A stretch of DNA of 64,000 bases, from contig NW_018480070.1 in the NCBI RefSeq assembly GCF_002113885.1, positions 248,001 through 312,000 of the forward strand, written 5' to 3'. This document shows, piece after piece, positions 23,866-53,832 of this stretch; position 1 is the stretch's first letter; every line of letters starts with the position of its first letter. Under the pieces are notes generated by a model, which saw only the letters and a program-made list of their open reading frames with translations, did not search any database and had not been told where the DNA came from. The stretch is from Mizuhopecten yessoensis. Lineage: Eukaryota. A program made the position numbers and the translations under genes.

Positions 23866-24427
23866 GTTTTTAACCTTTCGAATAACATACAAGGCGTAGC
23901 TTGCTTTGATGACAATTTTTGCGGTTTTTTATTTGAACATTTTTATAATATCAATTTGATGTTCTCTACAAAGGAATAATGTGTTATTTAGTATTACTGA
24001 GAGATAAACAGGTATACCTAATTAGTGAAAAAGGACAACTTGATAAACATTTCTATTTTTGACCAACTCGTAGTTAAGCTTTTATTATATTGGGTTTAAC
24101 GTCCGATTAACAGCTGAGGTGATAAAAGGACATGTGTCTAACGTATGCATTCAAGTGTGTATATGTGCTGAAATAGGTATTCTGGTGTAATTGCCTACTT
24201 GCAATGTGATGCCGACTTTATAGTGCTACCTCATTTAAATACCATGTCGAAAACACCCAGCATAGCAGGGGTATTTGGGATGGAACTATAACATAATTAT
24301 TTTTGTGAATAATCATGCATCACATCTTTTCAGTAATACTGATATCACGAACCTTTGTAAGTAAATAAAGCACAATCACACAATGAAAGCAAAAACACAC
24401 AATGAAAGCAAAATCACAGAGTGTTTT

Positions 24428-25188
24428 CATATTGTTACACACAATCATATTGTTTCACACAATCATATTGTTACACACAATCATATTGTTACACACAATC
24501 ATAATGTAACACACAATCATAATGTTACACACAATCATATTCTTACACACAATCATAATGTTACACACAATTATAATGTTACACACAATCATAATGTTAC
24601 ACACAATCATAATGTTAAACACAGTCATATTGTTACACACAATCATATTGTTACACACAGTCATATTGTTACACACAATCATATTGTTACACACAGTCAT
24701 ATTGTTACACACAATCATATTGTTACACACAATCTTAATGTAACACACAATCATAATGTTACACACAATCATAATGTTACACACAGACATATTGTTACAC
24801 ACAATCATATTGTTACACACAATCTTAATGTAACACACAATCATAATGTTACACACAATCATAATGTTAAACACAGTCATATTGTTACACACAATCATAT
24901 TGTTACACACAGTCATATTGTTACACACAATCATATTGTTACACACAATCATAGTGTTACACACAATCGTAATGTTACACACAATCATATTGTTACACAC
25001 AGTCATATTGTTACACACAATCATATTGTTACACACAGTCATATTGTTACACACAATCATATTGTTACACACAGTCATATTGTTACACACAATCATATTG
25101 TTACACACAATCACAATGTTACACACAATTATAATGTTACACACAATCATAATGTTACACACAATCATAATGTTACACACAATCATAT
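24428..25188. repeat. 18-bp minisatellite (ACACACAATCATATTGTT), about 42 copies
   Basis: Exact 18-bp period; it generates the spurious THNHIV/CNNMIV/LHTIIL ORFs. Confidence 0.97.
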
Positions 25189-28100
25189 CGTTCGCCGAAA
25201 TCTTTCGTTTCCGAACGTACACGTCCACTTGTTCGCTCCGTACACAGGGTGATGCTATGATATAAGCGACATGTGATACATAGTTTTGTTTGATTCGTTG
25301 TATTACTTTATCCGCTTATTTTTTATTATGCCATACACTAATACAGATAAACAAACATTGGCTACCAAAATGTGTGCTCATCATTACTGACAAGAAAAAA
25401 ACATAGCATACATTTTCCCCCATACATTCCATTCAAAATTATGATGATATCTGCACTACATCATGGTTAATAGTATCAGCTGCAAAACAAATGACGCCAT
25501 AGAATGTTGTTATGTCACGTGATCATAACGTTACACTTTGTTGACAATGTAACTATGGTCCAAACAGTCTTTGCCATTGCTTTGGAAAGTGTTTTTTGTA
25601 AGATAAACGGGTTTTAATTGGAAACAGACGGATAATCCATTAACTATTTTAATGTAGAGTCAATCATGGGGATCGGAGGTCAACGGGCTTTTGTGCCTAA
25701 AATTAAGGACATGTTCCCAAGCATTTGAAATACCCAGGAAGTAAATTGTTTCAGATTCTTGATAGGCGTTTTTCAGAAAATTTTGTTCTCAATTCAAAAG
25801 AGCTTTTTTTTCTGATATATGGGACATTCGCCAGAGCTTCGCAAAACAATGCACTAAAATCACAATATGAATGGACATGGAATGACACAATGCAAATGTA
25901 AAATTTCAAGAATCATTTTCGTCAATGAAAGTGAGAAAAGTTTGTAATAGTCCAGACGTCTACCTACGCAACGTGATGTCTTGCACTATGACCGTAGCTT
26001 AATATTTGTTTATAGTGCTTCGAAAATATCAGATGGAGTTAAGTGTTTGTTAGGAAAACAACGAAACACATGCGTTATTGCAAAACAAGAAGTTCGATAA
26101 TGGCTGTCTCAATTTCAACGTAAATATCAAAATATAATCATTCATACTTAGTATTAACAATATATATCATAATTTAGCTTATACGATTCTTTTATGACGA
26201 AACGGCTGGTTTGTACTATCAGTAAGACTTTGTCGATAGCGTAAACTATCAGATAAATAAAGGCTAGAACGTTCGTCAAATAGAAAACCCTGCTTATTGA
26301 TATCTTCGTTGTTGTTTAGTGTCTTTTTAGTGTCTTGTCGTATTACATTTGAGTTTAAATTTGATCCTTCTGTGTCTTTGCCTTGATAGTTGTGTTCTAC
26401 TTTAAGTAGTTATGAGTTGAAGAGCTGGGATGGACATAGTAATACTAGGAATTCCTTAGGTGCCTAACTTCTATATTAATAGTGTGAACTGCTGACCTTA
26501 GACCACATTAGAATACTTTGTTTAACAAATACAAAACTCCTTGATATAAGATTAATTTGTGTATCTTTTTTTTTTATATAATTGTAAGGGATTAGATTTG
26601 TCTTCCTTAAAAATGAATGTTTCTTGATAAGGTCTCTTGATTAATACCTTTCACATCAAATATGTTTTCTAAGTAAAATAGAAAAATGGAAATCGATGCA
26701 ATCGACGTAGATACAAAAAATGAATAAAAGGATCTTAAGGGATTCGAGAAAAAAACCCGGGAAACATGAGAACTCGGATTTTAAGGTGATTAGTTGGATT
26801 AAGCGTATCTGCACCACATGTGTCATCGTTCATGATGTCTCGTGCACAATTTAGGAAACATATTGGTCACCAAGGGTTTCGTCATATGGTAGACTTCAAT
26901 TCAGGTATTTCAAGATAAAGATAAAACACATAAATTGTTTTAATCTTTGCCGCTGAATCATTGAGAAATTTTCGGTGCCATATACTCCTAGTTGCATTAC
27001 TTATAATAGAGTACCATGTTACTGTTCAATGTCAATAGAGGCTCCGTTTTCAGTATCAATGATAGGTTCTGAATCGAACAAAAGACGGAAATGAAATTTG
27101 GATATGACAGGAAACACTCATACCAGCACACACTCACACACACAACCACACACAAAGAATAAAATACAGACCCAAAAATATCACGCAATAAGATATTTAA
27201 GCATTGAACTGTTTTTGTATGGTATTCATGATCTATTTGACTGACACAGCTTTGCAAGCAAACAACATAATGCATAGTTCAATACTTATATTTACGTTTT
27301 CTCTGCATCTTATGTTCTTTTTTAACTTCTAATTTATATTCAAAATTAAAAATGCCCGCCTTATCGACAGTTCACACAATTTCGTTCAATAGTTTGAACA
27401 GCGTATTGTCGCGTGCTGATTGGCAAACACGGTAGTACTTTGAAATTTTAACAACCATTTCAATTTTATTCCACAATTCAGTATCAATACAATTGCGTAT
27501 GATATGTCTATAGGGTGATTTAAGTTTATCAATAGAACTCTGAGCTGAAAGTTAGATTTGAAATTGTTTCGCGCATGGACAAATACAGTGAACACCGTAA
27601 ATCCGACCTTGCCCTCCACGAGGGAGTTATTTTTGGAAGTTAATTCGAACTTTTCTCTTTGCTCATTTTGTGAAGAAACCAGGCGTGAATTTATTTGTTG
27701 ATTGTATGGGAACCTGACAACAGTCGGTAGATTCTATAACAGCATCGTTATTTGACATGTCGTCAGAAACTGAGGAACCGTGGATGCGAGACGCGTGAAA
27801 CTGATAGCGTTTGAAGTGAGTGATCTTGCGACGGAGCACAGGTTCGTTACAAATGTCTGAAATGTTTATGTGTGCTGTGACTCATATCAGTAGGTCTGTA
27901 ACATATGTGTCAGTAGGTCTATAGAATATGTGTATTTCAGACATTTGTAACGAACCCCTGTTGATCAGTGCAGTGTAACAGACGATATTTCTGATAAATT
28001 GCATGAGCGTTAAAATTGTTTCCATTGCCGGCATTGGTGATTTCAACCGATGTGCATTTTGTACGATATTGCAGACCTTGGTCTTGTTTTCGTTGTAATA

Positions 28101-29994: not shown

Positions 29995-31879
29995 ATGGCT
30001 CAGCAAAATGAAGGTCTTGATTTGACAGCCAGAGATCCAAACTCCCTTCATGGGGACATACAGGTTAGCTTTTCATTTTTTCTGTTTTTCTTTCTTGTTG
30101 TCATATACCTATTGACATAAGTCGGTTGTCAGGTATGATAATGCGATTGAGTGGAATTGGGGGTATTGATAGGGGGAGTTAAGTAACTCAATAGGAATGA
30201 GTAAATGAATGTTTGTTCTTATTTGATAGGCAAAGCGTCATCTAAGGAAAATGTGAAGCAATCATCTTCATTTTTTTTATGTTTCTATTTAAAGTCAGTT
30301 CCTACAGATTTTTTTATCATTTATCCGTGCTTCTTACATAGTGTTACCTGTTTAAATGTGCAATTTAACATTTCAAAAAGGATAATGTAAGGATGTAAGA
30401 AAGATAATTGATCAGTCTCAACCCTTTAGTGTAATTATAAATAAACAATGCATCGACATTTGTTAAGATGACTTTGCGATGACCGTGTGATGTTATTAAG
30501 GTCATTGGAGTGTATCGATAAACGGAAACAGGAAGTACATCCCTAGTTGAAAATCCAATGTAGGGAGACAGTATCACAATTTCCGCAAATTCCAATGTTT
30601 AATATTAAACTGATGGATATTGTATGTTTATTATTGACAGAACAGTGTGTTCTCTCAATATTAAAGTATTTCAAAGCAATCCAGGCATCAATTCAGGGTT
30701 TTTTTCAATGAGTCACATGTGTCCATTTTTTCTGTACTTCAGGAAACCGGCTACCTATTTCACTACTGTGAAGGTTTTCAAGAACGATAACTCTTACCTG
30801 CAATTACTATGTGTATATGGTTTTATCATAAAATGTCAATTTGTATATCGTGTATAGAGAATTAATTTTACACAATTTCAGCATTCATTAAATTGATATA
30901 CATTAATGCAATACTAATATTTGTCAGTATCATTTTTATTGACATTATTTTGTAAAAATATTGTGTCTTTCATTTTTTTTTTCAAAATTCACTCCTCTCT
31001 ACATAAATTTCCATTTAAAATCCTTAAAATTCTGAGAACCTATATTTTTTTTTCGGCAGAAAATTTTCTTTACTTTAAAGCAATATAACTACAAAATTTG
31101 AAGAAATTCTAACGAGAAATGGTGACACAATCCTATTACCTTAATATACTTTATATGCTTATATTATTTTAATTATTTCATGTGGTATTCAATATGGTTC
31201 TTAGCGAAATATTTAACACTATTTCTGCAACATTAAATTCTCACCAAAGTTATAATTTAAAATTCTTATTTTGTTTATGTGTGAATCTGTCTTAAACTCT
31301 ATTACATTATATCAAAAATCAAGTATATTGTGAAACGTTTGATCTTTACATTCCCGTTCTGACGTATTAAATATATTGTAACAGAATGCAGTTCATTATT
31401 TCTATAGTAGTAAGCAATGTTGATTATCACTAGCGATTAACTTGTTTATCGATAATGTAAATCTTGAGTTATGCACTTAATACAAAGAAATGAATTCTGC
31501 AATGTATGCTGATCATATATATAATAGTAGTGACTTCCTTTAACAGGTTGCCTTTCACGATGTGTTGGGCGAGCCAGACGGTACCCATAGTATCGACTGT
31601 TTGTGGACCTCCTCTCACACGTGCTTCACCTGCTCAAAGAACTGCTGCTACAAGTTTGTCAGTACTTTGTGTGGCCTCTGCATCGCTGTTGCCTGGGGTT
31701 GTGAGTTCGCCCTGATCACCTTTGAGGCAGTGTGGTGCTTTACACCAGCTCTCAAGGCCTACTCAATAATTATGGGAATTAATCAGCGGTGCTTCGGTAT
31801 TCTCATCAGCTGCTGTCTTGCTCCAATCTGTGAAACATTTGGATTATGCTTCAGTAATATTTCAATGAAAAAGATGTGA
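29995..31879 (+). CDS. Caveolin B (133 aa); join(29995..30063,31547..31879)
   Basis: Exon 1 MAQQNEGLDLTARDPNSLHGDIQ|GTTAG; exon 2 (333 bp) VAFHDVLGEPDGTHSIDCLW...FSNISMKKM*. Confidence 0.95.
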
Positions 31880-32229
31880 AAACAATTGACAATCGATGAG
31901 ATATCTAAACTGATCGATAAATGTTACGTTTTCATATACTTGAAGGTGAGAGGATATCTTATGAAAATGCAGTGACTTCTAGATGACTTGTCTTGATAGC
32001 TGCATGACTTCGATAAGCTGAAACATGCTTTGTGCATATCAGGAACAAATCTAGAATCGTAATCACACGGACGTTCATAACATACCGTATAATGGAATGT
32101 CTAGATGCTTAACTGTAAAAAGTGTCGGTCACCAGCAGGCTAAATTAAAATGTTAAATAATTTATATGTTGTGCTTATTTCTTTCTTTGTTTGTTTTTAA
32201 ATATGCTGTAAAATAAGCTAGGCATATTA

Positions 32230-34135
32230 TATCAATAAGCCCCGGTCGATACAGAAGCATCTAATAAGTGAACCTATTACACTGATATAGACTCGTCTAA
32301 TAAGTATACCTAATACACTGATTCAAAACCGGCTAACAAGTATACCTATTACACTGATACCGAACCGTTTAACAAGTAATTACACCTATTACACTGATAC
32401 CGAACAGCAAACACGTTAACCTATTACAAAGATACAGAACCGGCTAACAAATTAACCTATTACCCTTATACAGAACCGGCTAACACGTAATTACACCTAT
32501 TGCACTGATACCGAACCAGCGAACAAGTTAACATATTACAAAGATACAGAACCGGCTAACAAGTTAACCTATTACCCTTATACAGAACCGGCTATCAAGT
32601 AATTACACCTATTACACTGATACCGAACCAGCTAACAAGTTAACATATTACAAAGATACAGAACCGGCTAACAAGTAAACCTATTACACTGATACCAAAC
32701 CGGCTAACATGTATACCTATTACACTGATACAGAACCGGCGAACAGGTAATTACACCTATTACACTGATACCGAACCGGCTAACACGTTAACCTAATACA
32801 CTGATGCAGAACCGGCTTCCAAGTAAACCGATTACACTGATATAGGTTTAGCTAACAAGTTTACCTATTACACTGATACAGAACCGGGTAACAAGTATAC
32901 CTATTACACTGATACAGAACCGACTAACAAGTAATTACACCTATTACACTGATACCGAACCGGCTAACACGTTAACCTAATACACTGATGCAGAACCGGC
33001 TTCCAAGTAAACCGATTACACTGATGTAGGATCGGCTAACAAGTTTACCTATTACACTGATACAGAACCGGCTAACAAGTAAACCTATTACACTGATACA
33101 GAACCGACTAAAACGTATACCTATTACACTGATACAGAACTGGCTAACACGTTAACCTTTTACACTGATACCGAATCGGCTAACACGTAAACCTTTTACA
33201 CTGATACAGAACCGACTAACAAGTATACCTATTACGCTGATACAGAACTGGCTAACACGTTAACCCATTAAACTGATACCGAACCGGCTAACAAGTAAAC
33301 CTTTTACACTGATACAGAATTGGCTAACACGTTAACCTATTACACTGATACCAAACCGGCTAAACAATTAAACCCATTACACTGATACAGAACCAACTAA
33401 AACGTTAACCTTTTACACTGATACCGAACCGGCTAACAAGTAAACCTTTTACACTGATACAGAACCGACTAACAAGTATACCTATTAGATTGATACAGAA
33501 CCGACTAACAAGTAAACCGATTAAGCTGATACTGAACTGGCTAACACGTTAACCCATTAAACTGATACCGAACCGGCTAACAAGTAAACCTTTTACACTG
33601 ATACAGAACCAACTAAAACGTATACCTATTACACTGATACAGAACTGGCTAACACGTTAACCCATTACACTGATACCGAACCGGCTAACAAGTTAACCTA
33701 TTACACTGATACAGAACCAACTAAAACGTATACCTATTACACTGATACAGAACTGGCTAACACGTTAACACTGATACCGAACTGGCTAAACAATTAAACA
33801 TATTTCATTGATACAGAACTGGCTATCAAGTATACCTATTACACTGATATAGGACCGGCTAACACGTATACCTATTACACTGATACAGAACCGGCTAACA
33901 AGTAAACCGATTACACTGATACAGAACCGACTAACAAGTTATTACACCTATTACACTGATACAGAACTGGCTAACACGTTAACACTGATACCGAACTGGC
34001 TAAACAATTAAACATATTTCATTGATACAGAACCTGCTAACATTTTAACCCATTACACTGATACAGAACCGGCTCTCAAGTATACCTATTACACTGATAT
34101 AGGACCGGCTAACAAATATATATATTACACTGATA
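32230..34135. repeat. 36-bp minisatellite (CCTATTACACTGATACAGAACCGGCTAACAAGTAAA; 39-bp variants), about 1.9 kb
   Basis: Period of 36 bp (TACAGAACC at 33061 and 33097). Confidence 0.97.
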
Positions 34136-34645
34136 CATGATAGGTTAAACAGTACATCTGTACACTGATTACGATACATAAATACATTTAATATACATAG
34201 GAAATATGCTGACATGAGCATGTTGCCATAGTAATATCTTTCACATTTTATTAATGTCTGCTTACTGGTCTCAATAAATGTTAATTTCAATTACCTATTA
34301 TATTTTGGTGGTTGTATTTAATGTATTAAAATAAACAATATATTTCTACAAGATGATAACAAATCTTTGCATATACCTTTTTGTATAATAGTGAATTGTA
34401 CCATAAAGTACATATAAGCATCACATTATACTATAAAATACAAGTACCATATTGTTTTATACTATACAATGCATTTAGCACAGTGTATATTTCTATAGAA
34501 ACCTGGACCACATTGTTGTGAGTTATGCTAAGTATTTTATACTACAAAATATACACATATGTATTTTTCACAGACACAACGAGTTGGTAACAGTCAGGGG
34601 CACTAAATTCCTTTGTTTAAATATATTAATTTAGTTAATCTAGCC

Positions 34646-35446
34646 ATGGATGGTTATACATTCGACCTGATGAACAGAGATCCTAACTCGCTCAAATTTT
34701 CTATAGAGGTTAGAGGTATGTATTATTTGTTATGATTTGGTTCAATTAAATGAATATTCCTTAAAGTGAATATTATTACATTTTCGCCAGACAAATATCG
34801 AACTTTATCACTTGATAAAAATGAGATATTTTGCTCTATAACAGATATCAAAAATGATATTTTACAGTATGAAAAAAACATTTATGGGATTCATTTATCA
34901 GAACGGCACTTTCTATTCACTTCATTCGAAATTGCAGATAAAAATAAAACGAAGGTAGACTAAGTAGTTGTTTTGGATACATCTTAGCTAGATTTATTAG
35001 ACACCAATTTACATTTTACTATGTCTTATTTATCATGTAATCAAACTTATCAAACAATAGCACAAAATGGTAGAATTTGTTTTAATAGTTAGCTCTTAAT
35101 TTTTTTGTTTGGATAGGTTGCCTTTGAAGATGTTTTGGGAGAACCAGAAGGGACACATAGTATTGACTTATCTGGCAACACAGCTATTCTTGCTTCACGT
35201 GTGGAAAGAACTAGTGCTACAAGTTCATGAGTACTTGTGTGGCATTTGTATCGCGCTTTACTGGTGGTGTGAGTTCGGCATGATCACGTTCGAGATGGTG
35301 TGGTGCTGTACACCCTCTCTCAAAGTCCACACCATCCTTCTCGGGATTTGCCAACGTTTCTTCGGATCATGTATCCGGTGCTGCCTGGCTCCTCTCTGTG
35401 AAACCATGGGATTATGTTTCAGTAATATTACTATTAATAAAAGTGA
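34646..35446 (+). pseudogene. Caveolin C pseudogene; exon 1 34646..34708, exon 2 35117..35446
   Basis: Exon 1 MDGYTFDLMNRDPNSLKFSIE. Exon 2 starts VAFEDVLGEPEGTHSID, then has a 1-bp deletion (~35169), TAG at 35212-35214 in the ancestral frame, a second 1-bp deletion (~35235) and a third in the A-run before the ancestral TGA (35444). About 200 bp of promoter, including the TATA present in F/G, is missing. Confidence 0.92.
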
Positions 35447-37534
35447 GGGGCGTTGTTTAATGAATTTAGTAATTCGATAAACTAATCAACTTACTTTGTG
35501 CTATATAGTTATTGCTGCATTTACAATAAAATATTTGTTTATATATTGATATGCTCCTTCAACTCAAAGATAACCCAACAGCAAATTGAAGTTAAAAATG
35601 GCCACCGAAGGTGACATTTAATGACCAATTATTACATGACGTACATTTGATCACAGGTTAACTTACATAACCTAGATTACAAAGTGTACATCAATACACA
35701 CTGTTTTTCTAATTATCTAATTATGACCTTTAGCCATAGTGGGGTTGTAAAAATCCGCCCAAAATGAAGAAATATATATTTATATATGTTGTTAATTTGT
35801 TTTCCTTGTATACTTACATGAACATATGTTTGTCAACACATACACTCTCTCACTGGGTAATATTTGGAATTCAAATAATATTAAATGAAAACAAAGTTGT
35901 CTGCAAAAATCGGACACCAAATCTCGAAACTTTTTTTTCATAATTCGAGACGTTGCATAAATTGTTCAGGTTGCTGCTGTATTGACCATCAATGGATTAC
36001 GCATAATGTGCCTATGTTGTGAGGACAATGATAGTACACGATTCCATAAAAAAACAACCGGATATTATATGTTTTTAGGCTTAAAATACTGAAGTTAATA
36101 TATGAAACAATAGATTTGGATAATAATAAATACCAATACTTTCTTCCTTTTTTTGTTATTTTGAAAATGTATAGTGTATGTTTTTCAAGACATGCTTATT
36201 TCATCAACAAAGACGGTTTTGCCTAAATCAAGTGACAAGTAGGTAGCTAACGACGGTATTCCACCTAGAAATATTATGAACAGAGGTAATTATTTTTTCA
36301 ATGCCTTCGCTAGGAGTCAAAGGCAGGACCTCTGGATTAGTGGTCGCACACTCAACCGAATGCGCCAAAGATAATTTCTTCCTAGCCATGTCGTTAAGAA
36401 GCGGATAATATTTTACCACGGTGACAATTAAAATGATCGGATTGCCAGGTTCAGATGGGATCAATTAATAGACATTTCTGTCATTTTATTTACGATAATC
36501 GATGTTAACCTAGATGCTATCTAAATATTTTTCAACCATTTGTTTATTATCTTATTTAAAAACAAACATTTTCCCTTCATCTATTTACCATCTTCATTAG
36601 TATTGTAATTACGTATTGCACGTGATTAAGGGGAGAAGAAAACGAAAAAAGACATGATATTCGATATGTCAGTCAGGTGGGTAAGTGTACACATGTCTTC
36701 CTGAGTAACACATAAATGATTTGGCGATACAAATATGTCCAATTGTAAAGGGAAATTAACAAAATAGGTAAGGTTAATTGAATTAGAACAATACTGTTAT
36801 ATCTAGACAGAATATTGTTATATATAATTGGAAAAGGATAAAATACATCAGCATGACTAAAGGAGGTACAGTTGAGAAGTCCGATAACTCCAAACATCGG
36901 TATAGTGTAAGACAAACCGTCCGTGTCCCGAGAAAAAACAGTACCTCTTATAGGTATACAAAACACGTCAAGAGTTGTGGAGGGATTATTTTATTCAGTG
37001 AATGCAATATATAAAAACCTTGTTAAAAATTCTACAAATTAGATAAAAAGGCTCTTGTGTTAAAAAACCCACAAAAAAAACTTGATTGATAACAGAGCGC
37101 TTCTACAAAGAAATTATACTGATATCTTAAGCAATTTGCAGTAAAGTGAATTCTCCATGATTTTATAAATTGATGAGCAAGTAAGGGCGATATACAGCTG
37201 ATGAGGCAAGTTATCTTTTTGGAAATAAATGCGTTTCGTTTGTCATATATGTTGGCACTGGGATGACTAATATTCCCATATTATAGGTGAATAGCATGAT
37301 ATGCAGTCTATAGTATATTTAAATATGGCCATTAAGGATACATGAATGAGAAAAGAAAGTCATCACCAATATATTTAAATTTATAATTTTAGGATTGGAA
37401 AGTATTTTATCATTATCTGTAATACCGTTTAAAAATTAAGCTTCATACGGTTACACAAGCAGATCCTTGTTTCATACGCGTTTCTTATATATTATCCCTA
37501 GTAGTGTGACGTCACTTCTATCGACAATTAGATA

Positions 37535-38328: not shown

Positions 38329-39242
38329 ATGGAAGGAGTTGACTTGATGGCAAGGGATCCTAACTCCCTTAATGATCTTGTGCAGGTTCGTTTTTTGGAA
38401 TGCTTATCATTATTTGTTTTGAGCTACAAAGCCAAAACAGCCAAAACAGTCGCAGCACGTCAAACGTTATATGTAAACAGCGAGCAACTTTGATAATACT
38501 AGATATATTAACCGTCGAACAACTGTGAAATCTAAAATGTTTACAATCGCCTGCATTCTATTGTAGAGGTAGGCTGACAAACTGTGTCAGGCCTACAAGA
38601 CAAAGTATTGAAATAATTGAATATGTACTTTTTACTGAATGGTCACTTTGATGAAGTTACTGCTTGTCTAAGCCTACGTAAAGTAAATATTGCATATTAA
38701 AAGCTATGAAAGAATTCATAAACATATTCTGCTATTTCTTAGTATGTGCGGTGAAAGAAGAATTGCGGAATATTTAAGTGTACTATCAATCTATTGTTCC
38801 CATATCGTTTTGTTTTTTTAAATTGAATGTTTGATGTCTTTTGTTTTATAAATTAAAAAAATGCTCAATAACGAAGATATTCAAACTAAAATACGATTTT
38901 CTTTAACAGGTAGCCTTTCACGATGTGTTGGGAGAGCCGGACGGTACACATAGTATTGACTGTGTGTGGACCACCGCTCACACGTGCTTCACCTGCTCAA
39001 AGAACTGCTGCTACAAATTTGTCAGTACTTTGTGTGGCCTCTGCATCGCTGTTGCCTGGGGCTGTGAGTTCGCCTTGATCACCTTTGAGGCAGTGTGGTG
39101 CTTTACACCAGCTCTCAAGGCCTACTCAATAATTATGGGAATTAATCAGCGGTTCTTCGGTATTCTCATCAGCTGCTGTCTTGCTCCAATCTGTGAAACA
39201 TGTGGATTATGCTTGAGTAATATCTCAATGAAAAAGATGTGA
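38329..39242 (+). CDS. Caveolin D (129 aa); join(38329..38385,38910..39242)
   Basis: Exon 1 MEGVDLMARDPNSLNDLVQ|GTTCG; exon 2 (333 bp) VAFHDVLGEPDGTHSIDCVW...LSNISMKKM*; AATAAA at 39371. Confidence 0.95.
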
Positions 39243-39394
39243 AAACAATTGACAAGTGATAAAATATCTAAACTTTTTAATTTATATTTTATTTTCCATG
39301 CTGGAGAAGGTTATACCATCACATCAGCTGGACTTCATTCATTAGAAGAACATTATTATTGATATGGTGAAATAAACAACGATTGTACGTACAT

Positions 39395-43902: not shown

Positions 43903-44869
43903 ATGTCGGAGCAGGATAAAGAGGTTGACTTGGAAAGCAGGGACCCCAACTCCCTCAACGGTCATGTGCAGGTACTTATTCGTGACTGTACATCAATAAG
44001 GGAAAATGTTATGAAACATTTTCTTAATAGACAAATTTCATAGGAAAAAATATTTATGGCTTCTTGACAGATTCTTGATTTTTAATTTTATCAATATTAA
44101 TTTGTCGATTTATTGGTTTAAGTGTTATATTGATAGTCATTGAGTGTCGTCCTGAGCTTGGTAGGCAACACAACGAAACTAAAACTTTCTCCTCTTAGGT
44201 TTTGTTATAGTGGTTATCACCACACGGATTCGAAATTAAGTAATAACCAACGATTATATTCATGAACGTATATAGAAACGCTCTATATATTATTAGCGAA
44301 CATGTCACAAATTGCTCAAATTTCAATAGTGCAATAATTCTTAAGTTGCTTGAAGTTTGAATAATTCCCTAGCAACAATGAAAACTTTAAATTTTCATCT
44401 TTTAATATTGCAGTCGATATTCATTATGCAACATAAAGTAAACTATAGATGTATAAGAAATACATTATTACGCATTATATTGCACATACATACATTATAT
44501 CACATCTTAATTTTATTTTATTCGTTATTTTGATAGGTTGTCTTTGAAGATGTCCTGGGAGAACCAGATACGGCACATAGTATCGACTGTGTCTGGAAAA
44601 ACAGCTACTCTTGCTTCAATTGTGGAAAGAATTGTTGCTACAAGTTCATGAGTACGCTGTGTGGCATTTGTATCGCGCTTTACTGGGGATGCGAGTTCGC
44701 CATGATCACGTTTCAGATGGTGTGGTGCTGTACACCCTCTCTCAAGGTCCATACCATCATGCTCGGCATTTGCCAACGTTTCTTCGGATCATGTATCCAG
44801 TGCTGCCTTGCTCCTCTCTGTGAAACCATGGGATTATGTTTCAGTAATATCACTATTAATAAAAAGTGA
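43903..44869 (+). CDS. Caveolin E (133 aa); join(43903..43971,44537..44869)
   Basis: Exon 1 MSEQDKEVDLESRDPNSLNGHVQ|GTACTT; exon 2 (333 bp) VVFEDVLGEPDTAHSIDCVWK...FSNITINKK*; AATAAA at 45087. Confidence 0.95.
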
Positions 44870-45913
44870 GGAGACGTTGTTTCATGAGTTTAGTAACTCG
44901 ATAGACTAATCAACCTACTTTGTGCTATATGGCAATCAAAAGACTGTGATACTGACTGATTTCGACAGGGATCTGCAATTGAGTCAATCATGTTTTTACA
45001 AACACTTGATACTTCTGGGAAATATTCAATGAACTATTTATAAATCATCTGTTAATATTCTAAAGACATTGCTGCATTTCTTTTACAATAAAATATTTGT
45101 TTATATATTTATTTATTTTGTGAATTTGTTCTCTGTGTAATACTTGCATGAATACATTTTTGTCGCCATTATCATAACAAACACGCTCTCCCTGGGTAAT
45201 ATATGAAATTCAAATACTATTGAATGAAGACAAAGGTGTCTGCGAGAATCGGACACCAAATCCCGTAAGTCCCCTTCAAACTTCGAGACGTTGCATTAGT
45301 TGTTTAGGTTGTTGCTATGGTGACCATCAGTGGATTACTCGTACTATGCCTATGTTGTGAGGACAATAGTAGTGCACGGTTCTATATCAAAGCAAACGAA
45401 TATTATATGTATTTAGAATTAAAATCTTTAAGCTAGCATATGAAACAATATGTTTTGATAACAATATACAATTACTTACTTCCCTTCCACTATTTCGAAA
45501 ATTATAGTGCATGTTTTTCAAGACATGCTTATTTCATCAACAAGACGTTTATTTGGTCTAAAGCAAATGGAATGCTGTTTGCTTACAGTCGCAACGCATG
45601 TGTTATTCCACCTAGAAATATTATTAACAGAGGTCATTATTTTTTCAATGGATTCGAAAAAAGGACCTCTTGTTTACCAGTCTACCGAATGAGCTATAGA
45701 GAAATTCTCCCAGGCCGAGTCGGTAGTAAGCAACATGTATTTTACCAAGGTGACAATTAAAAAGATATACAAAACAAGTGTTGTGTAGGGTTAGTTTTTT
45801 CAGTGAATTTAATATATAAAAACATTCTTAAATTTTTTGAAATAAGATAAAAAGGCTCTTGTGTGAAAAAAAGACAAACAAATACTTAATTGACAACAGA
45901 GCGCTTCTACATA

Positions 45914-46140
45914 GCCGCGCTGGCAATCTGACAATCTGCTACCACTAACCTTCTGCCACTAGATCGCGGGTTCGATGCCTACATTTTGTACGTAGGGCAG
46001 TTGCTAGGTATTGACCGTAGGTCGGTGGTTTTTCACCGGGAACTCCGGCTTTCGTCCACCACCAAAACCTGGAACGTCCTTAAATGACTCTAGCTACATG
46101 TATTAATAGGACGTAAAACAAATACACACTAAACCAAACA
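45914..46140 (+). mobile_element. V-type SINE (head partly deleted), same family as 40219..40443
   Basis: GCCGCG...CTGCTACCACTA...GGGTTCGAT...GGTCGGTGGTTTTTCACCGGGAACTCCGGCTTTC...AAACCAAAC. Confidence 0.8.
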
Positions 46141-46200
46141 ATATATAAAAACAAAGAAACAAAGAAAGTAATATTTTAGAACGTTGACAGTGAAATGCAC

Positions 46201-46387
46201 ATACTGTGTACCGGACAATTTTCGCCACAGTTTAATTTTCGCCTTTTTCGCCCTCCGTAATAAGGGTGAATTTATCATGAGAGCTAATATTAGACTACAT
46301 CATACCATTTATATTAAATTCATATGAAAGGCGAAATATACACCTGGCGAATGTTTGACTGAGCGAAAGGTACCCGCTATACAGTAT
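46201..46387. mobile_element. MITE with ATACTGT...ACAGTAT termini and TTTCGCC/GGCGAAA subterminal motifs
   Basis: Inverted termini; duplicate at 50676..50862 and an inverted relative at ~37.6 kb. Confidence 0.65.
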
Positions 46388-47813
46388 CATTTATTTCTAT
46401 GGTGTTACATACTACTATTGACCATTGTTATTAATCGTTGAATATTTGAAGAAAAGCTTTGTCAGGCCCAGCATCAATACATTTGTAGATCAAAAATACA
46501 TATATTTTAGTTGCAAGGCGTTGCATCACTAAGTGTTACGCATTAACACAGTTTTCAAATGAATGAAAGGTCTAGTATCAGTATTTGTAAAATGACATTT
46601 TCTTTCGACGAATTGTGTTCAAATGAAATCATAAATCGGGATGGAAGGGTGAAAATCAACGAACGTAAAAAGAGTGATAATGTTTGAAACTATGCCTATT
46701 ATGTACAATGCAAAAATGGGGGAATGAAAGAGGACCGGTTAAGAAATACATCGAATAAACTAATACATAACCGGCTAACAAGTTAACCCATTACACTGAT
46801 ACAGAACCGGCTAACAAGTATACATATTTCACATATACAGGACCGACTAATAGGTTAACCTATTACAATGCTTCAGAATAAATATATACTAATAAATGCA
46901 TTAAAATCAGAAAATACGATGACATTAGCATGTTGCCACATTACCAACTTTCAGTTTTTATAATTTCCTGTTTACTGGTCATAATAATCGTTTATTTGAA
47001 TTACCGTATTCTGGTTTGATGCCTGTATTTAATGTATTAAAATAAAACAATGTATTATTGCAAGATGATAATCTACCGTATTTACCCAGAATGTAGTATA
47101 ACTGTCAATCATTGATTGAAATTGCATGTAGTATAGTGTATTATACCATAAAGTACATTAAAGCGCATCTCATTATTCTATAAGATACATGTACCATATT
47201 GTTTAATACTTTAAAATACTTTAACACAATGAAATATTCTATAGAAACCTGAACCATATTGTATTCACTACAACATACATGAACCGCAATGTATTATACT
47301 ATACTATACGTGTACTGCATTGAATTTAACACTAATTTTATACATTCTTATAATGTGTATCGACTATACTAGTAGTAATACTTTAGTTAGCATGATACAG
47401 TATCCAATTCTAAAGAATTGACAAATTATTCTTATAAACCACGACCTGTGTCTATCATTGGCTATCATTGTCATTAGCTCAAATTTAATTTTAAAAAAAA
47501 TAGAAATCGTAATTTCACGCACATGACGTTTAAGACATTGTTAACAATATGGACGTCTATTTACGTTTGTTTCGAACATTCTTTTATATATCAAAACACA
47601 TCAGAGAGTAGAAAGTGAGTGTAGGAAAACGTCCATATTTAATTGCTTTTAAATATATAGACCGAGTTTGGTAGAGTGTCATTGATCTATAGTTTAAAAA
47701 CACACATATGCATTTTTCACATACAGCGAGTTGGTAACAGTCAGGAGCACTAAATTCCTGTTTTTAAAGACATAGCATAATGGCGTTTCCCTTGGATTCC
47801 ATTGAAACTTTAG

Positions 47814-47898
47814 GACCCTCCCCCTTTCAAATCATCCATTCAGATTTATAGAGACAGTTGTCAAGTAATCGGAGTATACACAACACAGCCGTATAAAT
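47814..47898 (+). promoter_or_regulatory. Caveolin F proximal promoter (C-rich box, GACAGTTGTCAAG, TATAAAT); copy before G at 52289..52373
   Basis: Motifs shared with the E promoter; TATA 83 bp upstream of the ATG. Confidence 0.55.
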
Positions 47899-47974
47899 TC
47901 GATTCTTTTTTCATTGTTCATTACTTGTAGTCATTCTCTTTATCTGTGCGGATAAGACGACAGTATATCCAGCC

Positions 47975-49344
47975 ATGGAGGAACAATCCCCAGTCGATCT
48001 GGAGAACAGAGATATCAACTCTCTTAATTCATCTATACAGGTATGTATCATTTGTTATGATTTGGTTTAATTAAATGTATACTACTAAAAGTAAATATCA
48101 TTACATTTTTGGCGGATGAATATCGAATTCTATCACTTGATCAAAACGATATCTTTTATCCAGGAGTTATATTAAAAGTGTGAATATATCACCTATACAA
48201 ACTCACTAATCAGAACGGCACTTTCAATTCACTTCATTCAATACTGCAGATTTTCTGTTCAGATACAGATGAAATGATGGTAAAATAAATAGTTGTTTTT
48301 TATACTTCTTAGTTAGACTTACGAAGGAATTAATTTACCTTTATAACTTTAACCATTTATTATATAAATCTCATCAAATAATAACACGAAACTGTAGAAT
48401 TTTGTCGAGTGGCTCTTTCACAACTACATGCAACCTTGTTGTCAAGCATGACGTCATTAGAACATGGCGGCAAAGTAGCGCAGTCATGTCTCAAAATATT
48501 TTGATACAATTACATTTTCGTCGTTGTAGGTAGTTTAAAAATGGTATTAATATAGACATTTAATTTTTTTGCGTTTATTATTAGTATATATATATATATA
48601 TATATATATGTTTCAATCATTTGGCAGAATAAACCGATATTTTCACTCATGAAAAAATTAAGTATTTTGCTATAATCGAAAACTATATATGTGATAATCA
48701 ACTGAATATCCTGTATTTATCTTCCTATGGCAATCTTTATGGAATGGTTTAAAGTTTTACAGTGGTTTAAAGAGTGGTGTTGATTTGCATTTGGAAATGC
48801 TAGGGACACATACTAGTGAACTGCTTAATACCATACCACAAGAACGATTAATTTAAGTTGATAAAACTTGTTCTTTCTTTGTTGTTAAAGAAGATACAAA
48901 AAGTAAATGACTTGCACCAGGGGATACGAAAACACACGAATTTGTGCATTGTTAGGATGTCCTTTCTATTTATATCACATTTAATTTTTATTTAATTCGT
49001 TGTTTTAATAGGTTGCCTTTGAAGATGTTTTGGGAGAACCAGATACGACACATAGTATCGACTGTGTCTGGAAAAACAGCTACTCATGTTTCAATTGTGG
49101 AAAGAATTGTTGCTACAAGTTCATGAGTACGCTGTGTGGTATTTGTATCGCGCTTTACTGGGGATGCGAGTTCGCCATGATCACGTTTCAGATGGTGTGG
49201 TGCTGTACACCCTCTCTCAAGGTCCATACCATCATGCTCGGCATTTGCCAACGTTTCTTCGGATCATGTATCCAGTGCTGCCTTGCTCCTCTCTGTGAAA
49301 CCATGGGATTATGTTTCAGTAATATCACTATTAATAAAAAGTGA
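47975..49344 (+). CDS. Caveolin F (132 aa; G/E chimera); join(47975..48040,49012..49344)
   Basis: Exon 1 MEEQSPVDLENRDINSLNSSIQ|GTATGT; exon 2 (333 bp) VAFEDVLGEPDTTHSIDCVWK...FSNITINKK*. Confidence 0.93.
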
Positions 49345-50388
49345 GGAGACGTTGTTTCATGAGTTTAGTAACTCGATAGACTAATCAACCTACTTTGTGC
49401 TATATGGCAATCAAAAGACTGTGATACTGACTGATTTCGACAGGGATCTGCAATTGAGTCAATCATGTTTTTACAAACACTTGATACTTCTGGGAAATAT
49501 TCAATGAACTATTTATAAATCATCTGTTAATATTCTAAAGACATTGCTGCATTTCTTTTACAATAAAATATTTGTTTATATATTTATTTATTTTGTGAAT
49601 TTGTTCTCTGTGTAATACTTGCATGAATACATTTTTGTCGCCATTATCATAACAAACACGCTCTCCCTGGGTAATATATGAAATTCAAATACTATTGAAT
49701 GAAGACAAAGGTGTCTGCGAGAATCGGACACCAAATCCCGTAAGTCCCCTTCAAACTTCGAGACGTTGCATTAGTTGTTTAGGTTGTTGCTATGGTGACC
49801 ATCAGTGGATTACTCGTACTATGCCTATGTTGTGAGGACAATAGTAGTGCACGGTTCTATATCAAAGCAAACGAATATTATATGTATTTAGAATTAAAAT
49901 CTTTAAGCTAGCATATGAAACAATATGTTTTGATAACAATATACAATTACTTACTTCCCTTCCACTATTTCGAAAATTATAGTGCATGTTTTTCAAGACA
50001 TGCTTATTTCATCAACAAGACGTTTATTTGGTCTAAAGCAAATGGAATGCTGTTTGCTTACAGTCGCAACGCATGTGTTATTCCACCTAGAAATATTATT
50101 AACAGAGGTCATTATTTTTTCAATGGATTCGAAAAAAGGACCTCTTGTTTACCAGTCTACCGAATGAGCTATAGAGAAATTCTCCCAGGCCGAGTCGGTA
50201 GTAAGCAACATGTATTTTACCAAGGTGACAATTAAAAAGATATACAAAACAAGTGTTGTGTAGGGTTAGTTTTTTCAGTGAATTTAATATATAAAAACAT
50301 TCTTAAATTTTTTGAAATAAGATAAAAAGGCTCTTGTGTGAAAAAAAGACAAACAAATACTTAATTGACAACAGAGCGCTTCTACATA

Positions 50389-50615
50389 GCCGCGCTGGCA
50401 ATCTGACAATCTGCTACCACTAACCTTCTGCCACTAGATCGCGGGTTCGATGCCTACATTTTGTACGTAGGGCAGTTGCTAGGTATTGACCGTAGGTCGG
50501 TGGTTTTTCACCGGGAACTCCGGCTTTCGTCCACCACCAAAACCTGGAACGTCCTTAAATGACTCTAGCTACATGTATTAATAGGACGTAAAACAAATAC
50601 ACACTAAACCAAACA
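50389..50615 (+). mobile_element. V-type SINE, duplicate of 45914..46140
   Basis: Identical copy within the 4475-bp duplication. Confidence 0.8.
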
Positions 50616-52449
50616 ATATATAAAAACAAAGAAACAAAGAAAGTAATATTTTAGAACGTTGACAGTGAAATGCACATACTGTGTACCGGACAATTTTCGC
50701 CACAGTTTAATTTTCGCCTTTTTCGCCCTCCGTAATAAGGGTGAATTTATCATGAGAGCTAATATTAGACTACATCATACCATTTATATTAAATTCATAT
50801 GAAAGGCGAAATATACACCTGGCGAATGTTTGACTGAGCGAAAGGTACCCGCTATACAGTATCATTTATTTCTATGGTGTTACATACTACTATTGACCAT
50901 TGTTATTAATCGTTGAATATTTGAAGAAAAGCTTTGTCAGGCCCAGCATCAATACATTTGTAGATCAAAAATACATATATTTTAGTTGCAAGGCGTTGCA
51001 TCACTAAGTGTTACGCATTAACACAGTTTTCAAATGAATGAAAGGTCTAGTATCAGTATTTGTAAAATGACATTTTCTTTCGACGAATTGTGTTCAAATG
51101 AAATCATAAATCGGGATGGAAGGGTGAAAATCAACGAACGTAAAAAGAGTGATAATGTTTGAAACTATGCCTATTATGTACAATGCAAAAATGGGGGAAT
51201 GAAAGAGGACCGGTTAAGAAATACATCGAATAAACTAATACATAACCGGCTAACAAGTTAACCCATTACACTGATACAGAACCGGCTAACAAGTATACAT
51301 ATTTCACATATACAGGACCGACTAATAGGTTAACCTATTACAATGCTTCAGAATAAATATATACTAATAAATGCATTAAAATCAGAAAATACGATGACAT
51401 TAGCATGTTGCCACATTACCAACTTTCAGTTTTTATAATTTCCTGTTTACTGGTCATAATAATCGTTTATTTGAATTACCGTATTCTGGTTTGATGCCTG
51501 TATTTAATGTATTAAAATAAAACAATGTATTATTGCAAGATGATAATCTACCGTATTTACCCAGAATGTAGTATAACTGTCAATCATTGATTGAAATTGC
51601 ATGTAGTATAGTGTATTATACCATAAAGTACATTAAAGCGCATCTCATTATTCTATAAGATACATGTACCATATTGTTTAATACTTTAAAATACTTTAAC
51701 ACAATGAAATATTCTATAGAAACCTGAACCATATTGTATTCACTACAACATACATGAACCGCAATGTATTATACTATACTATACGTGTACTGCATTGAAT
51801 TTAACACTAATTTTATACATTCTTATAATGTGTATCGACTATACTAGTAGTAATACTTTAGTTAGCATGATACAGTATCCAATTCTAAAGAATTGACAAA
51901 TTATTCTTATAAACCACGACCTGTGTCTATCATTGGCTATCATTGTCATTAGCTCAAATTTAATTTTAAAAAAAATAGAAATCGTAATTTCACGCACATG
52001 ACGTTTAAGACATTGTTAACAATATGGACGTCTATTTACGTTTGTTTCGAACATTCTTTTATATATCAAAACACATCAGAGAGTAGAAAGTGAGTGTAGG
52101 AAAACGTCCATATTTAATTGCTTTTAAATATATAGACCGAGTTTGGTAGAGTGTCATTGATCTATAGTTTAAAAACACACATATGCATTTTTCACATACA
52201 GCGAGTTGGTAACAGTCAGGAGCACTAAATTCCTGTTTTTAAAGACATAGCATAATGGCGTTTCCCTTGGATTCCATTGAAACTTTAGGACCCTCCCCCT
52301 TTCAATTCATCCATTCAGATTTATAGAGACAGTTGTCAAGTAATCGGAGTATACACAACACAGCCGTATAAATTCGATTCTTTTTTCATTGTTCATTACT
52401 TGTAGTCATTCTCTTTATCTGTGCGGATAAGACGACAGTATATCCAGCC

Positions 52450-53832
52450 ATGGAGGAACAATCCCCAGTCGATCTGGAGAACAGAGATATCAACTCTCTT
52501 AATTCATCTATACAGGTATGTATCATTTGTTATGATTTGGTTTAATTAAATGTATACTACTAAAAGTAAATATCATTACATTTTTGGCGGATGAATATCG
52601 AATTCTATCACTTGATCAAAACGATATCTTTTATCCAGGAGTTATATTAAAAGTGATATTTTTACAGTGTGAATATATCACCTATACAAACTCACTAATC
52701 AGAACGGCACTTTCAATTCACTTCATTCAATACTGCAGATTTTCTGTTCAGATACAGATGAAATGATGGTAAAATAAATAGTTGTTTTTTATACTTCTTA
52801 GTTAGACTTACGAAGGAATTAATTTACCTTTATAACTTTAACCATTTATTATATAAATCTCATCAAATAATAACACGAAACTGTAGAATTTTGTCGAGTG
52901 GCTCTTTCACAACTACATGCAACCTTGTTGTCAAGCATGACGTCATTAGAACATGGCGGCAAAGTAGCGCAGTCATGTCTCAAAATATTTTGATACAATT
53001 ACATTTTCGTCGTTGTAGGTAGTTTAAAAATGGTATTAATATAGACATTTAATTTTTTTTGCGTTTATTATTAGTATATATATATATATATATATATGTT
53101 TCAATCATTTGGCAGAATAAACCGATATTTTCACTCATGAAAAAATTAAGTATTTTGCTATAATCGAAAACTATATATGTGATAATCAACTGAATATCCT
53201 GTATTTATCTTCCTATGGCAATCTTTATGGAATGGTTTAAAGTTTTACAGTGGTTTAAAGAGTGGTGTTGATTTGCATTTGGAAATGCTAGGGACACATA
53301 CTAGTGAACTGCTTAATACCATACCACAAGAACGATTAATTTAAGTTGATAAAACTTGTTCTTTCTTTGTTGTTAAAGAAGATACAAAAAGTAAATGACT
53401 TGCACCAGGGGATACGAAAACACACGAATTTGTGCATTGTTAGGATGTCCTTTCTATTTATATCACATTTAATTTTTATTTAATTCGTTGTTTTAATAGG
53501 TTGCCTTTGAAGATGTTTTGGGAGAACCAGATACGACACATAGTATCGACTGTGTCTGGAAAAACAGCTACTCATGTTTCAATTGTGGAAAGAATTGTTG
53601 CTACAAGTTCATGAGTACGCTGTGTGGTATTTGTATCGCGCTTTACTGGGGATGCGAGTTCGCCATGATCACGTTTCAGATGGTGTGGTGCTGTACACCC
53701 TCTCTCAAAGTCCATACCATCATGCTCGGCATTTGCCAACGTTTCTTCGGATCATGTATCCAGTGCTGCCTTGCTCCTCTCTGTGAAACCATGGGATTAT
53801 GTTTCAGTAACATTACTATAACAAAGAAATGA
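52450..53832 (+). CDS. Caveolin G (132 aa); join(52450..52515,53500..53832)
   Basis: Exon 1 identical to F; exon 2 (333 bp) ends FSNITITKK*; unique 3' UTR with AATAAA at 54135. Confidence 0.95.

What the first reader, a model, noticed from the sequence alone, without database searches (positions are those of the whole stretch)
47975..49344. Caveolin F is a chimera of G (5') and E (3') with the crossover mappable to 80 bp
Seen: F matches G in promoter, exon 1, intron and all seven diagnostic exon-2 sites up to 49140 (T in F and G 53628; C in E 44665). F matches E from 49221 (G in F and E 44746; A in G 53709) through the stop, 3' UTR and downstream spacer. Inference: unequal crossing-over between E and G within exon 2 (49141-49220) created a new gene and the 4.48-kb duplication very recently, since I noticed only four differences between the copies. 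It pairs G's promoter with E's 3' UTR. A false duplication made by joining two haplotypes at the near-identical exons would look the same.
Basis: partly seen in the sequence, partly recalled or inferred. Interest (0 to 1): 0.7.

Follow-up and report, generated by a model that had tools for sequence, protein, structure and literature searches.

The report
Hybrid caveolin gene, duplication unproven
In the Yesso scallop's caveolin gene cluster, gene F reads exactly like the product of an unequal exchange between its neighbours E and G, but the genome was built from short reads only, so it is still open whether the extra copy exists in the animal.

Summary
A 4,475/4,488-bp unit (44666-49140, 49141-53628) lies twice in tandem, and the joint falls inside caveolin exon 2. 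F matches G at all 12 diagnostic sites up to 49140. It matches E at all 8 exon-2 sites from 49221, then through the 3' UTR and spacer. Pseudogene C as outgroup shows both edges of the 80-bp interval are shared derived states.

- This is the Illumina-only Mizuhopecten yessoensis assembly. Nine unplaced small contigs tile the unit once, so both scaffold copies were probably rebuilt by gap filling.
- "Only four differences, so very recent" is therefore unsafe. The source data carry further variants that neither scaffold copy shows.
- The F-versus-G differences appear as ordinary polymorphisms in three other animals.
- The pairing of G-type 5' with E-type 3' is not new. Pseudogene C has the same layout at 70-89% identity.
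- Exon 2 evolves in concert within scallop species, so such exchanges recur.

No raw reads were served, so depth and phasing could not be tested. My estimate is about 0.6 for a real, probably copy-number-variable duplication, about 0.3 for an assembly loop artefact, and the rest for an older homogenised three-gene array.

The parts
43903..43971 (+). Caveolin E exon 1 (E-type, 133-aa class)
   Evidence: tblastn of the exon-1 peptide; the protein XP_021343336.1 = P0126 begins MSEQDKEV; donor CAG|GTACTT
44537..44869 (+). Caveolin E exon 2 (333 nt including stop), upstream recombination substrate
   Evidence: Pfam PF01146 at 3.8e-32; acceptor and stop checked
44666..49140 (+). Tandem unit, copy 1 (4,475 bp): E exon-2 3' part, E/F-type 3' UTR, spacer, F exon 1, F intron, F exon-2 5' part
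   Evidence: Alignment to 49141-53628 shows only 4 differences
45600..46350 (.). High-copy interspersed repeat inside the spacer (same in copy 2 at about 50075-50825)
   Evidence: Contig word depth in the thousands in all four runs; dozens of 79-83% matches across the genome; no tRNA call
46759..46867 (.). 36-bp x 3 minisatellite; contigs of the source and of other animals break here
   Evidence: Tandem Repeats Finder; contig ends at 46803/46805
47831..47831 (.). Copy difference 1: A in the F copy, T at 52306 in the G copy
   Evidence: In other animals: T only in X5 and X11, both letters in X4
47975..48040 (+). Caveolin F exon 1 (identical to G exon 1 at 52450-52515)
48041..49011 (+). F intron (971 bp; G's is 984 bp). 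It holds copy differences 2-4: the 14-bp indel at 48177, the T-run at 48564 and (TA)n at 48585
49012..49344 (+). Caveolin F exon 2, the hybrid: G-type up to 49140, E-type from 49221
   Evidence: Pfam PF01146 at 1.1e-32; annotated as XP_021343337.1 = P0132
49141..49220 (+). Exchange interval: 80 bp identical in E, F and G
   Evidence: Bounded by 49140 (F = G, derived T) and 49221 (F = E, derived G), polarised with pseudogene C
49141..53628 (+). Tandem unit, copy 2 (4,488 bp): F exon-2 3' part, 3' UTR, spacer, G exon 1, G intron, G exon-2 5' part
52450..52515 (+). Caveolin G exon 1
53500..53832 (+). Caveolin G exon 2, downstream recombination substrate. The sequence after the stop codon is unrelated to that after E and F
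34101..37110 (+). Pseudogene C locus: an old copy with the same layout as F (G-type upstream, exon 1 and intron; exon 2; E-type 3' UTR and downstream)
   Evidence: Colinear blocks matching 46803-47262, 47696-47768, 47991-48402, 49000-49405, 49577-50241 and 50238-50389 at 70-89%; frameshifted exon 2

Best explanation
F is the duplication-side product of an unequal, homology-guided exchange between exon 2 of caveolin E and exon 2 of caveolin G. These are two old paralogues 8.96 kb apart in the same orientation. Exon 2 is the only part of them that still aligns at the DNA level. The exchange fell in an 80-bp block of identity (49141-49220). It copied the 4.48-kb stretch between the two exons and left a gene with G's upstream region, exon 1, intron and exon-2 start, joined to E's exon-2 end, 3' UTR and downstream spacer. 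This is the layout of haemoglobin anti-Lepore: upstream gene, then a hybrid with the downstream gene's 5' end and the upstream gene's 3' end, then the downstream gene.

Shown: the sequence pattern, the polarity of the two bounding sites, and an intact 132-codon reading frame with GT-AG splice sites.

Inferred: that the extra copy is present in the sequenced animal. If it is, it is probably a copy-number variant, not a fixed gene. Such exchanges recur in scallop caveolin arrays, so F re-creates an old gene layout and does not invent one.
For: Pattern: searches show a perfect 12 | 7 split of diagnostic sites (7 | 8 in exon 2), a period equal to the exon-2 spacing, and no inserted letters at the joint.

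Polarity: pseudogene C carries E's letter at 49086, 49089 and 49140, and G's letter at 49221. F therefore shares a derived state with G on the left and with E on the right.

Signs that the assembler met a two-copy signal: nine unplaced contigs (L001-L009) tile the unit exactly once. Eight of them are 100% identical to both scaffold copies. None was seen in about 19 kb of flanks. None of 8 randomly drawn small contigs has a 100% twin in a scaffold. These pieces therefore behave like repeat-masked graph nodes.

Three versions in the source assembly: at 47445/47489/47831/47852, copy 1 reads C,T,A,A; copy 2 reads C,T,T,A; L004 reads T,deletion,A,T. That is one more version than a single-copy diploid locus can hold.

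Recurrence: E, F and G share four exon-2 residues special to this species, while their two exon-1 types are shared with Pecten, Ylistrum and Argopecten. Pecten maximus has gene pairs with the same exon 1 but different exon-2 ends.
Against: The assembly is Illumina-only (x297 coverage, median scaffold 362 bp; PMC5836269 Table 5). No read can span a 4.5-kb 99.9% repeat.

The two scaffold copies are identical at sites where the source's own leftover contigs break or differ. The sequence is therefore a gap-fill product, and copy 1's A-A pair at 47831/47852 could be a consensus chimera.

In three other animals the 14-bp indel shows one state each: present in X4, absent in X5 and X11. At 47831, X5 and X11 show only T. 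These behave as allelic polymorphisms, not as fixed copy differences.

Contigs of X11 keep the E-type letters at 49086-49140, and those of X4 keep G's A at 49221. Neither is expected if F+G outnumber E, and E+F outnumber G, by 2:1.

Contig word-depth ratios of exon 2 to unit are 1.6-1.7 in X4 and X5. One unit predicts 1.54 and two units predict 1.27. X11 gives 0.75, which fits neither.

The one RNA run laid shows nothing on F's exons.
Confidence: 0.6

Rival explanations
1. Assembly artefact. The animal has only E and G. The shared 80-180 bp in exon 2 makes a cycle in the short-read graph: E 3' end, spacer, G 5' part, shared block, and back to the E 3' end. Scaffolding or gap filling walked the cycle once too often. 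F, and the RefSeq protein XP_021343337.1, would then be phantoms, and the four 'copy differences' would be the animal's two alleles picked differently on the two passes.
For: The assembly is Illumina-only. Every graph node of the unit is left unplaced, so the 9 kb in the scaffold must be filled-in sequence. There are zero differences over 3,085 bp even though the source data vary there. All four differences lie within 755 bp, and two of them are a homopolymer and a microsatellite. The SNP and the 14-bp indel are ordinary polymorphisms in other animals, with a single state per animal in most cases. In X4 and X11 the letters kept at 49221 and at 49086-49140 fit 1:1 better than 2:1. Depth ratios in X4 and X5 fit one unit.
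Against: Short-read assemblers normally collapse near-identical tandem copies; they do not add one. An extra lap would overshoot the mate-pair gap estimate by 4.5 kb. With one unit, its contigs would have normal depth and consistent links, with no reason to be left out. Yet they are, unlike the flanks and unlike 8 of 8 random small contigs. Three versions of 47445-47852 exist in the source assembly. The copies are too alike (99.9%) to have been kept apart as haplotypes.
Confidence: 0.32
2. An old three-gene array kept uniform. E, an F-type gene and G have stood side by side for a long time. F has the ancestral layout, as in pseudogene C. E and G are the chimeric ends of the array, made by older deletions that fused neighbours. 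Repeated gene conversion or cycles of loss and gain keep the units nearly identical, so the present identity says nothing about when F first arose.
For: Pseudogene C is colinear with F across the joint at 70-89% identity, so the F layout predates C's decay. Exon 2 evolves in concert within the species, while the exon-1 types are shared between species. B and D exon 2 are 94% alike with unalignable flanks. E's 5' region and G's 3' region have no relatives in the window.
Against: Conversion tracts of 4.5 kb that cover whole spacers, with 0 differences in 3 kb, amount to a fresh duplication. The zones where E differs from F and where G differs from F are exactly complementary, as one exchange predicts. 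Two independent older joints would not have to be complementary. This reading also presupposes that the copy is real.
Confidence: 0.08

Closest known systems
Haemoglobin anti-Lepore (duplication product of unequal delta/beta-globin crossing-over); from general knowledge, not tested here
   Same: Two same-orientation paralogues recombine out of register. The duplicated chromosome carries the upstream gene, then a hybrid with the downstream gene's 5' end and the upstream gene's 3' end, then the downstream gene. The joint is a single switch of paralogue-specific sites with no new sequence.
   Different: Here homology is confined to one 333-bp exon with identity blocks of only 80 and 101 bp. The hybrid protein differs from G by one residue and from E by exon 1 plus two residues. 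Physical existence is not yet shown.
Red/green opsin arrays and other copy-number-variable tandem arrays shaped by non-allelic homologous recombination; general knowledge
   Same: A head-to-tail array with near-identical units, hybrid genes, concerted evolution of part of the gene, and a likely variable unit number between individuals.
   Different: The opsin units are about 39 kb and homologous throughout. Here the flanking substrates share only exon 2, and the evidence for variable copy number is indirect and mixed.
False duplications in short-read assemblies of heterozygous genomes (described by Kelley and Salzberg 2010 and Ko et al. 2022; cited from memory, not read here)
   Same: An Illumina-only bivalve assembly, a near-identical adjacent copy, copy differences that coincide with population polymorphisms, and redundant leftover contigs.
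   Different: Typical false duplicates are diverged haplotypes set side by side, often next to gaps and with arbitrary ends. Here the copies are 99.9% alike, the window has no N, and the ends sit at homologous points of two paralogous exons.
Caveolin family (Pfam PF01146), mollusc short 'core-only' caveolins
   Same: Exon 2 covers profile positions 24-132 of 133 at E = 1e-32. Close relatives are annotated caveolin-1-like in four scallop species.
   Different: Nothing special to F: it is one more member of an array of at least 11 genes on this scaffold.

Membership tests
Tandem duplication by non-allelic homologous recombination (hybrid gene of anti-Lepore type) | Two paralogous substrates in direct orientation flank the duplicated stretch | tested here: met
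   E exon 2 (44537-44869) and G exon 2 (53500-53832) are both on the + strand, with 15 differences in 333 nt
Tandem duplication by non-allelic homologous recombination (hybrid gene of anti-Lepore type) | The repeat period equals the distance between homologous points of the substrates; the joint adds no sequence | tested here: met
   Exon-2 starts at 44537, 49012 and 53500 give periods of 4,475 and 4,488. The 13-bp excess comes from the three indels. There is no insertion at the joint
Tandem duplication by non-allelic homologous recombination (hybrid gene of anti-Lepore type) | The hybrid shows one switch from downstream-gene letters to upstream-gene letters | tested here: met
   12 sites F=G, then 80 identical bases, then 8 exon-2 sites F=E plus the whole 3' flank; both edges are shared derived states
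Tandem duplication by non-allelic homologous recombination (hybrid gene of anti-Lepore type) | The extra copy exists physically: spanning molecules, or doubled depth | tested here: inconclusive
   Only Logan contigs were served. They break at 49037, 49219 and 49293 and cannot phase 49140 with 49221. Word-depth ratios conflict between runs. Indirect signs from leftover contigs favour two copies
Tandem duplication by non-allelic homologous recombination (hybrid gene of anti-Lepore type) | The reciprocal deletion or other unit numbers segregate in the population | not testable with these tools
False (assembly) duplication | Each copy has half the depth of the flanks | not testable with these tools
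   No raw-read run was offered. No single-copy flank was included in the one read-laying run, which was my own design error
False (assembly) duplication | The differences between the copies are the animal's allelic variants | tested here: inconclusive
   47831 and the 14-bp indel are population polymorphisms, mostly with one state per animal. But the source assembly holds three versions of 47445-47852
False (assembly) duplication | Gaps or contig ends at the borders of the duplicate | tested here: not met
   There is no N anywhere in the window. The borders lie at homologous points inside two exons
Caveolin (PF01146) | A match to the family profile above the curated cut-off | tested here: met
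   113.3 bits against a cut-off of 25, covering profile positions 24-132 of 133, for F exon 2; likewise for E and G

The most novel reading that the evidence does not exclude
The E-F-G stretch is a small copy-number-variable tandem array, and the conserved caveolin exon 2 acts as its recombination hot spot. The F layout (G-type 5', E-type 3') would be the array's ancestral unit, preserved in decayed form as pseudogene C. E and G would be the chimeric ends of the array. Repeated gain and loss of units would explain why exon 2 is homogenised within each scallop species while the exon-1 lineages are older than the species.
Probability: 0.35. Interest if true: 0.45.

Novelty: new member of a known kind. 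Interest (0 to 1): 0.3.

Why it matters
If real, this is a clean invertebrate example of a hybrid gene made by unequal exchange, with the joint mapped to 80 bp. It would be a ready marker for copy-number variation and concerted evolution in a scallop caveolin array. The mechanism itself is textbook.

If it is an artefact, RefSeq protein XP_021343337.1 is a phantom, and counts of caveolin 'expansion' in this widely used reference are inflated by one. It would also warn that near-identical tandem genes in this Illumina-only assembly need read-level checks.

Either way, the number of differences between the two scaffold copies should not be used to date the event.

Tried and rejected
1. Copy number from Logan contig word depths, using per-k-mer ownership that includes pseudogene C. 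X4 and X5 fit one unit. X11 fits neither model. A two-arm bubble in X4 (4.9 + 4.81) adds up to only half of its flanks (about 20). I rejected this as unreliable; I had also laid no single-copy flank.

2. Using which allele the contigs kept at 49086-49140 and at 49221 as a 2:1 versus 1:1 test. This rests on my memory of the contig builder's bubble rule, and on every animal sharing the reference's diagnostic letters. I treat it as a weak hint only.

3. Reading contig breaks at 45948, 46301 and 46804 as copy differences. The first two lie in a high-copy repeat and the third in a 36-bp minisatellite, so they are not evidence.

5. The genome paper's methods. It is not held under its DOI or PMC id. 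Only a summary table in PMC5836269 could be read.

6. Relatives of E's 5' region and G's 3' region within the window. There are none beyond one 94-bp weak match.

7. A tRNA-derived origin for the spacer repeat. ARAGORN found nothing.

8. Expression. The RNA run X19 covers only the interspersed repeat, not F's exons.

9. The spliced 132-codon model was never joined for any search.

Full report
**What is there**

The window is G000:C76743:248001-312000 of a 988-Mb assembly in 82,659 pieces. Source names on the closest proteins identify the organism as Mizuhopecten (Patinopecten) yessoensis, the Yesso scallop.

Eight two-exon caveolin genes lie head to tail in the window. Three more exon-2 copies lie further along the scaffold.
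- E: exon 1 at 43903-43971, exon 2 at 44537-44869.
- F: exon 1 at 47975-48040, a GT..AG intron at 48041-49011, exon 2 at 49012-49344.
- G: exon 1 at 52450-52515, exon 2 at 53500-53832.
- Each exon 2 matches Pfam Caveolin PF01146 at about 1e-32 over nearly the whole profile.
- RefSeq already lists the three as XP_021343336.1, XP_021343337.1 and XP_021343338.1.

I searched the exons one by one and by reference. The joined 132-codon model was not built or searched.

**Check of the observation**

- Self-comparison finds 44495-49344 repeated at 48970-53832 with 99.24% identity.
- The base-by-base alignment shows 12 E-versus-F differences packed into 44506-44665.
- From there to 49220/53708 there are four differences: an A/T at 47831, a 14-bp indel at 48177, and one-base and two-base length changes in a T-run and a (TA)n run.
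- F-versus-G differences begin at 49221. They become dense at 49323-49341, after which G's sequence is unrelated.
- Over 3,085 bp (44746-47830 against 49221-52305) the copies are identical.
- In exon 2 the 15 informative sites split 7 (F=G) then 8 (F=E). With the 12 + 7 sites, a perfect two-block order has chance about 4e-5.

**The 80-bp interval**

Its right edge rests on one site, 49221. Had that been a fresh mutation in G, the interval would widen to 49141-49322.

Pseudogene C (exon 2 at 35105-35444, 89% identical) serves as an outgroup. It has G's A at the 49221 position and E's letters at 49086, 49089 and 49140. F therefore shares a derived letter with G on the left and a derived letter with E on the right. 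On the assembled sequence, the 80-bp mapping holds.

The longest perfect E-G identity blocks are 101 bp (49222-49322) and 80 bp (49141-49220). From general knowledge, these are short but workable substrates for homologous exchange.

**Context that changes the reading**

First, the layout 'G-type upstream, exon 1 and intron, plus E-type 3' UTR and downstream' is not new. I tested this. C's locus (34101-37110) matches 46803-47262, 47696-47768, 47991-48402, 49000-49405, 49577-50241 and 50238-50389, in that order and at 70-89%. It is therefore colinear with F right across the joint. A gene of F's layout existed long before the present near-identical copies.

Second, exon 2 evolves in concert.
- E, F and G share four residues special to this species: S48, N51, Q83 and S91 in the alignment. 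Both gene types in Pecten maximus, Argopecten irradians and Ylistrum balloti carry K, T, E and A there.
- The two exon-1 types, in contrast, are shared across the species.
- Pecten maximus has pairs of genes with identical exon 1 but different exon-2 ends: XP_033745938 with XP_033745939, and XP_033745940 with XP_033745941.
- B and D exon 2 are 94% alike with unalignable flanks.
- E and G align nowhere except in exon 2 and the last 42 bp of the intron.

Exchange within exon 2 is thus a recurring process in these arrays. F is best seen as its latest product, not as a new kind of gene.

**Is the copy real?**

This could not be settled.

The assembly is Illumina-only: x297 coverage, median scaffold 362 bp (PMC5836269, Table 5). 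The genome paper itself is not held.

Nine unplaced contigs of 328-699 bp (L001-L009) tile the 4.48-kb unit exactly once.
- They break at variable sites and at 49185 (49140 + 45) and 49278 (49323 - 45). They therefore look like graph pieces built with a word size of about 45.
- Eight of them are 100% identical to both scaffold copies. The scaffold's 9 kb therefore seems to have been regenerated by gap filling from pooled reads.
- That explains why the copies are identical where the source data vary, and why the only differences lie within 1.5 kb of G's unique flank.
- It also makes 'four differences, hence very recent' unsafe.
- The ninth contig, L004, carries 47445 T, a deletion at 47489, 47831 A and 47852 T. 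Copy 1 reads C,T,A,A and copy 2 reads C,T,T,A.

For a real duplication:
- Such leftover twins are absent from about 19 kb of flanks.
- They are absent for 8 of 8 randomly drawn small contigs, which are repeat variants or unique pieces. The unit's pieces were therefore probably set aside as repeats, as expected for double depth or conflicting links.
- Three versions of 47445-47852 exceed what one diploid single-copy locus can hold.
- Short-read assemblers tend to collapse such repeats, not add to them.

For an artefact:
- Copy 1's A-A pair could be a consensus chimera.
- In three independent animals (X4, X5, X11; all Logan contigs) the 14-bp indel shows one state per animal: present in X4, absent in X5 and X11.
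- At 47831, X5 and X11 show only T.
- X11's contig keeps E-type letters at 49086-49140 and X4's keeps G's A at 49221. Neither fits a 2:1 excess.
- Word-depth ratios of the exon-2 contig to the unit are 1.61 (X4) and 1.72 (X5). One unit predicts 1.54 and two units predict 1.27. X11 gives 0.75, which fits neither.

Limits of this evidence:
- Contigs cannot give copy number.
- All contigs break at 49037, 49219 and 49293, where pseudogene C and the paralogues share 31-mers. None links 49140 to 49221.
- The RNA run X19 shows nothing on F's exons.

**Verdict**

The sequence pattern is a textbook product of unequal homologous exchange, of the anti-Lepore type, with the joint in 49141-49220.
- About 0.6: the extra unit exists in the sequenced animal. 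If so, it is most likely a segregating copy-number variant, given the mixed signals from other animals.
- About 0.3: it is a graph-loop or gap-filling artefact.
- The rest: an older three-gene array kept uniform by conversion.

The event cannot be dated from the scaffold. The promoter/3' UTR pairing is ancestral, not new. Reads of the source sample that phase 49140 with 49221, depth relative to the flanks, or one long read across 44-54 kb would decide the matter.

Noticed in passing
window 43903-53832 (protein P0001 = OWF35034.1): The depositors' GenBank gene model joins E's exon 1 to G's complete exon 2, skipping E exon 2 and all of F. It is probably a homology-guided mis-prediction that picked the best-scoring exons. 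RefSeq models the three genes separately.
   Followed up: partly
window 34101-37110: Pseudogene C (frameshift and stop in exon 2) has the same layout as F, with G-type 5' and E-type 3' parts at 70-89% identity. It also serves as an outgroup for the E/G diagnostic sites.
   Followed up: yes
window 31532-31911 and 38895-39274: Exon 2 of caveolins B and D is 94% identical, while their flanks do not align. This is a second pair in the array that looks homogenised by exchange limited to exon 2.
   Followed up: partly
G000:C76743:316574-316884, 323045-323360 and 343582-343897 (beyond the window): Three more caveolin exon-2 copies (74-75% identity to F) lie downstream on the same scaffold, so the array has at least 11 members.
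   Followed up: no
window 45600-46350 (and about 50075-50825): A high-copy interspersed repeat in the E-F and F-G spacers. It has dozens of copies at about 80% identity genome-wide and a word depth in the thousands in every run, including the RNA run. ARAGORN calls no tRNA.
   Followed up: partly
window 47831 and 47852: Four combinations of two SNPs 21 bp apart are seen: A-A and T-A in the scaffold, A-T in leftover contig L004 and in X4, and T-T in X11. In X4 the two bubble arms (depths 4.9 and 4.81) add up to only half of the flanking contigs (about 20). I have no explanation for this.
   Followed up: partly
window 32248-34140, 16920-20114, 1-1320 and 24427-25192: Large internal tandem-repeat blocks (about 75-92% self-identity) elsewhere in the window. 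One of them fills most of the B-C spacer.
   Followed up: no
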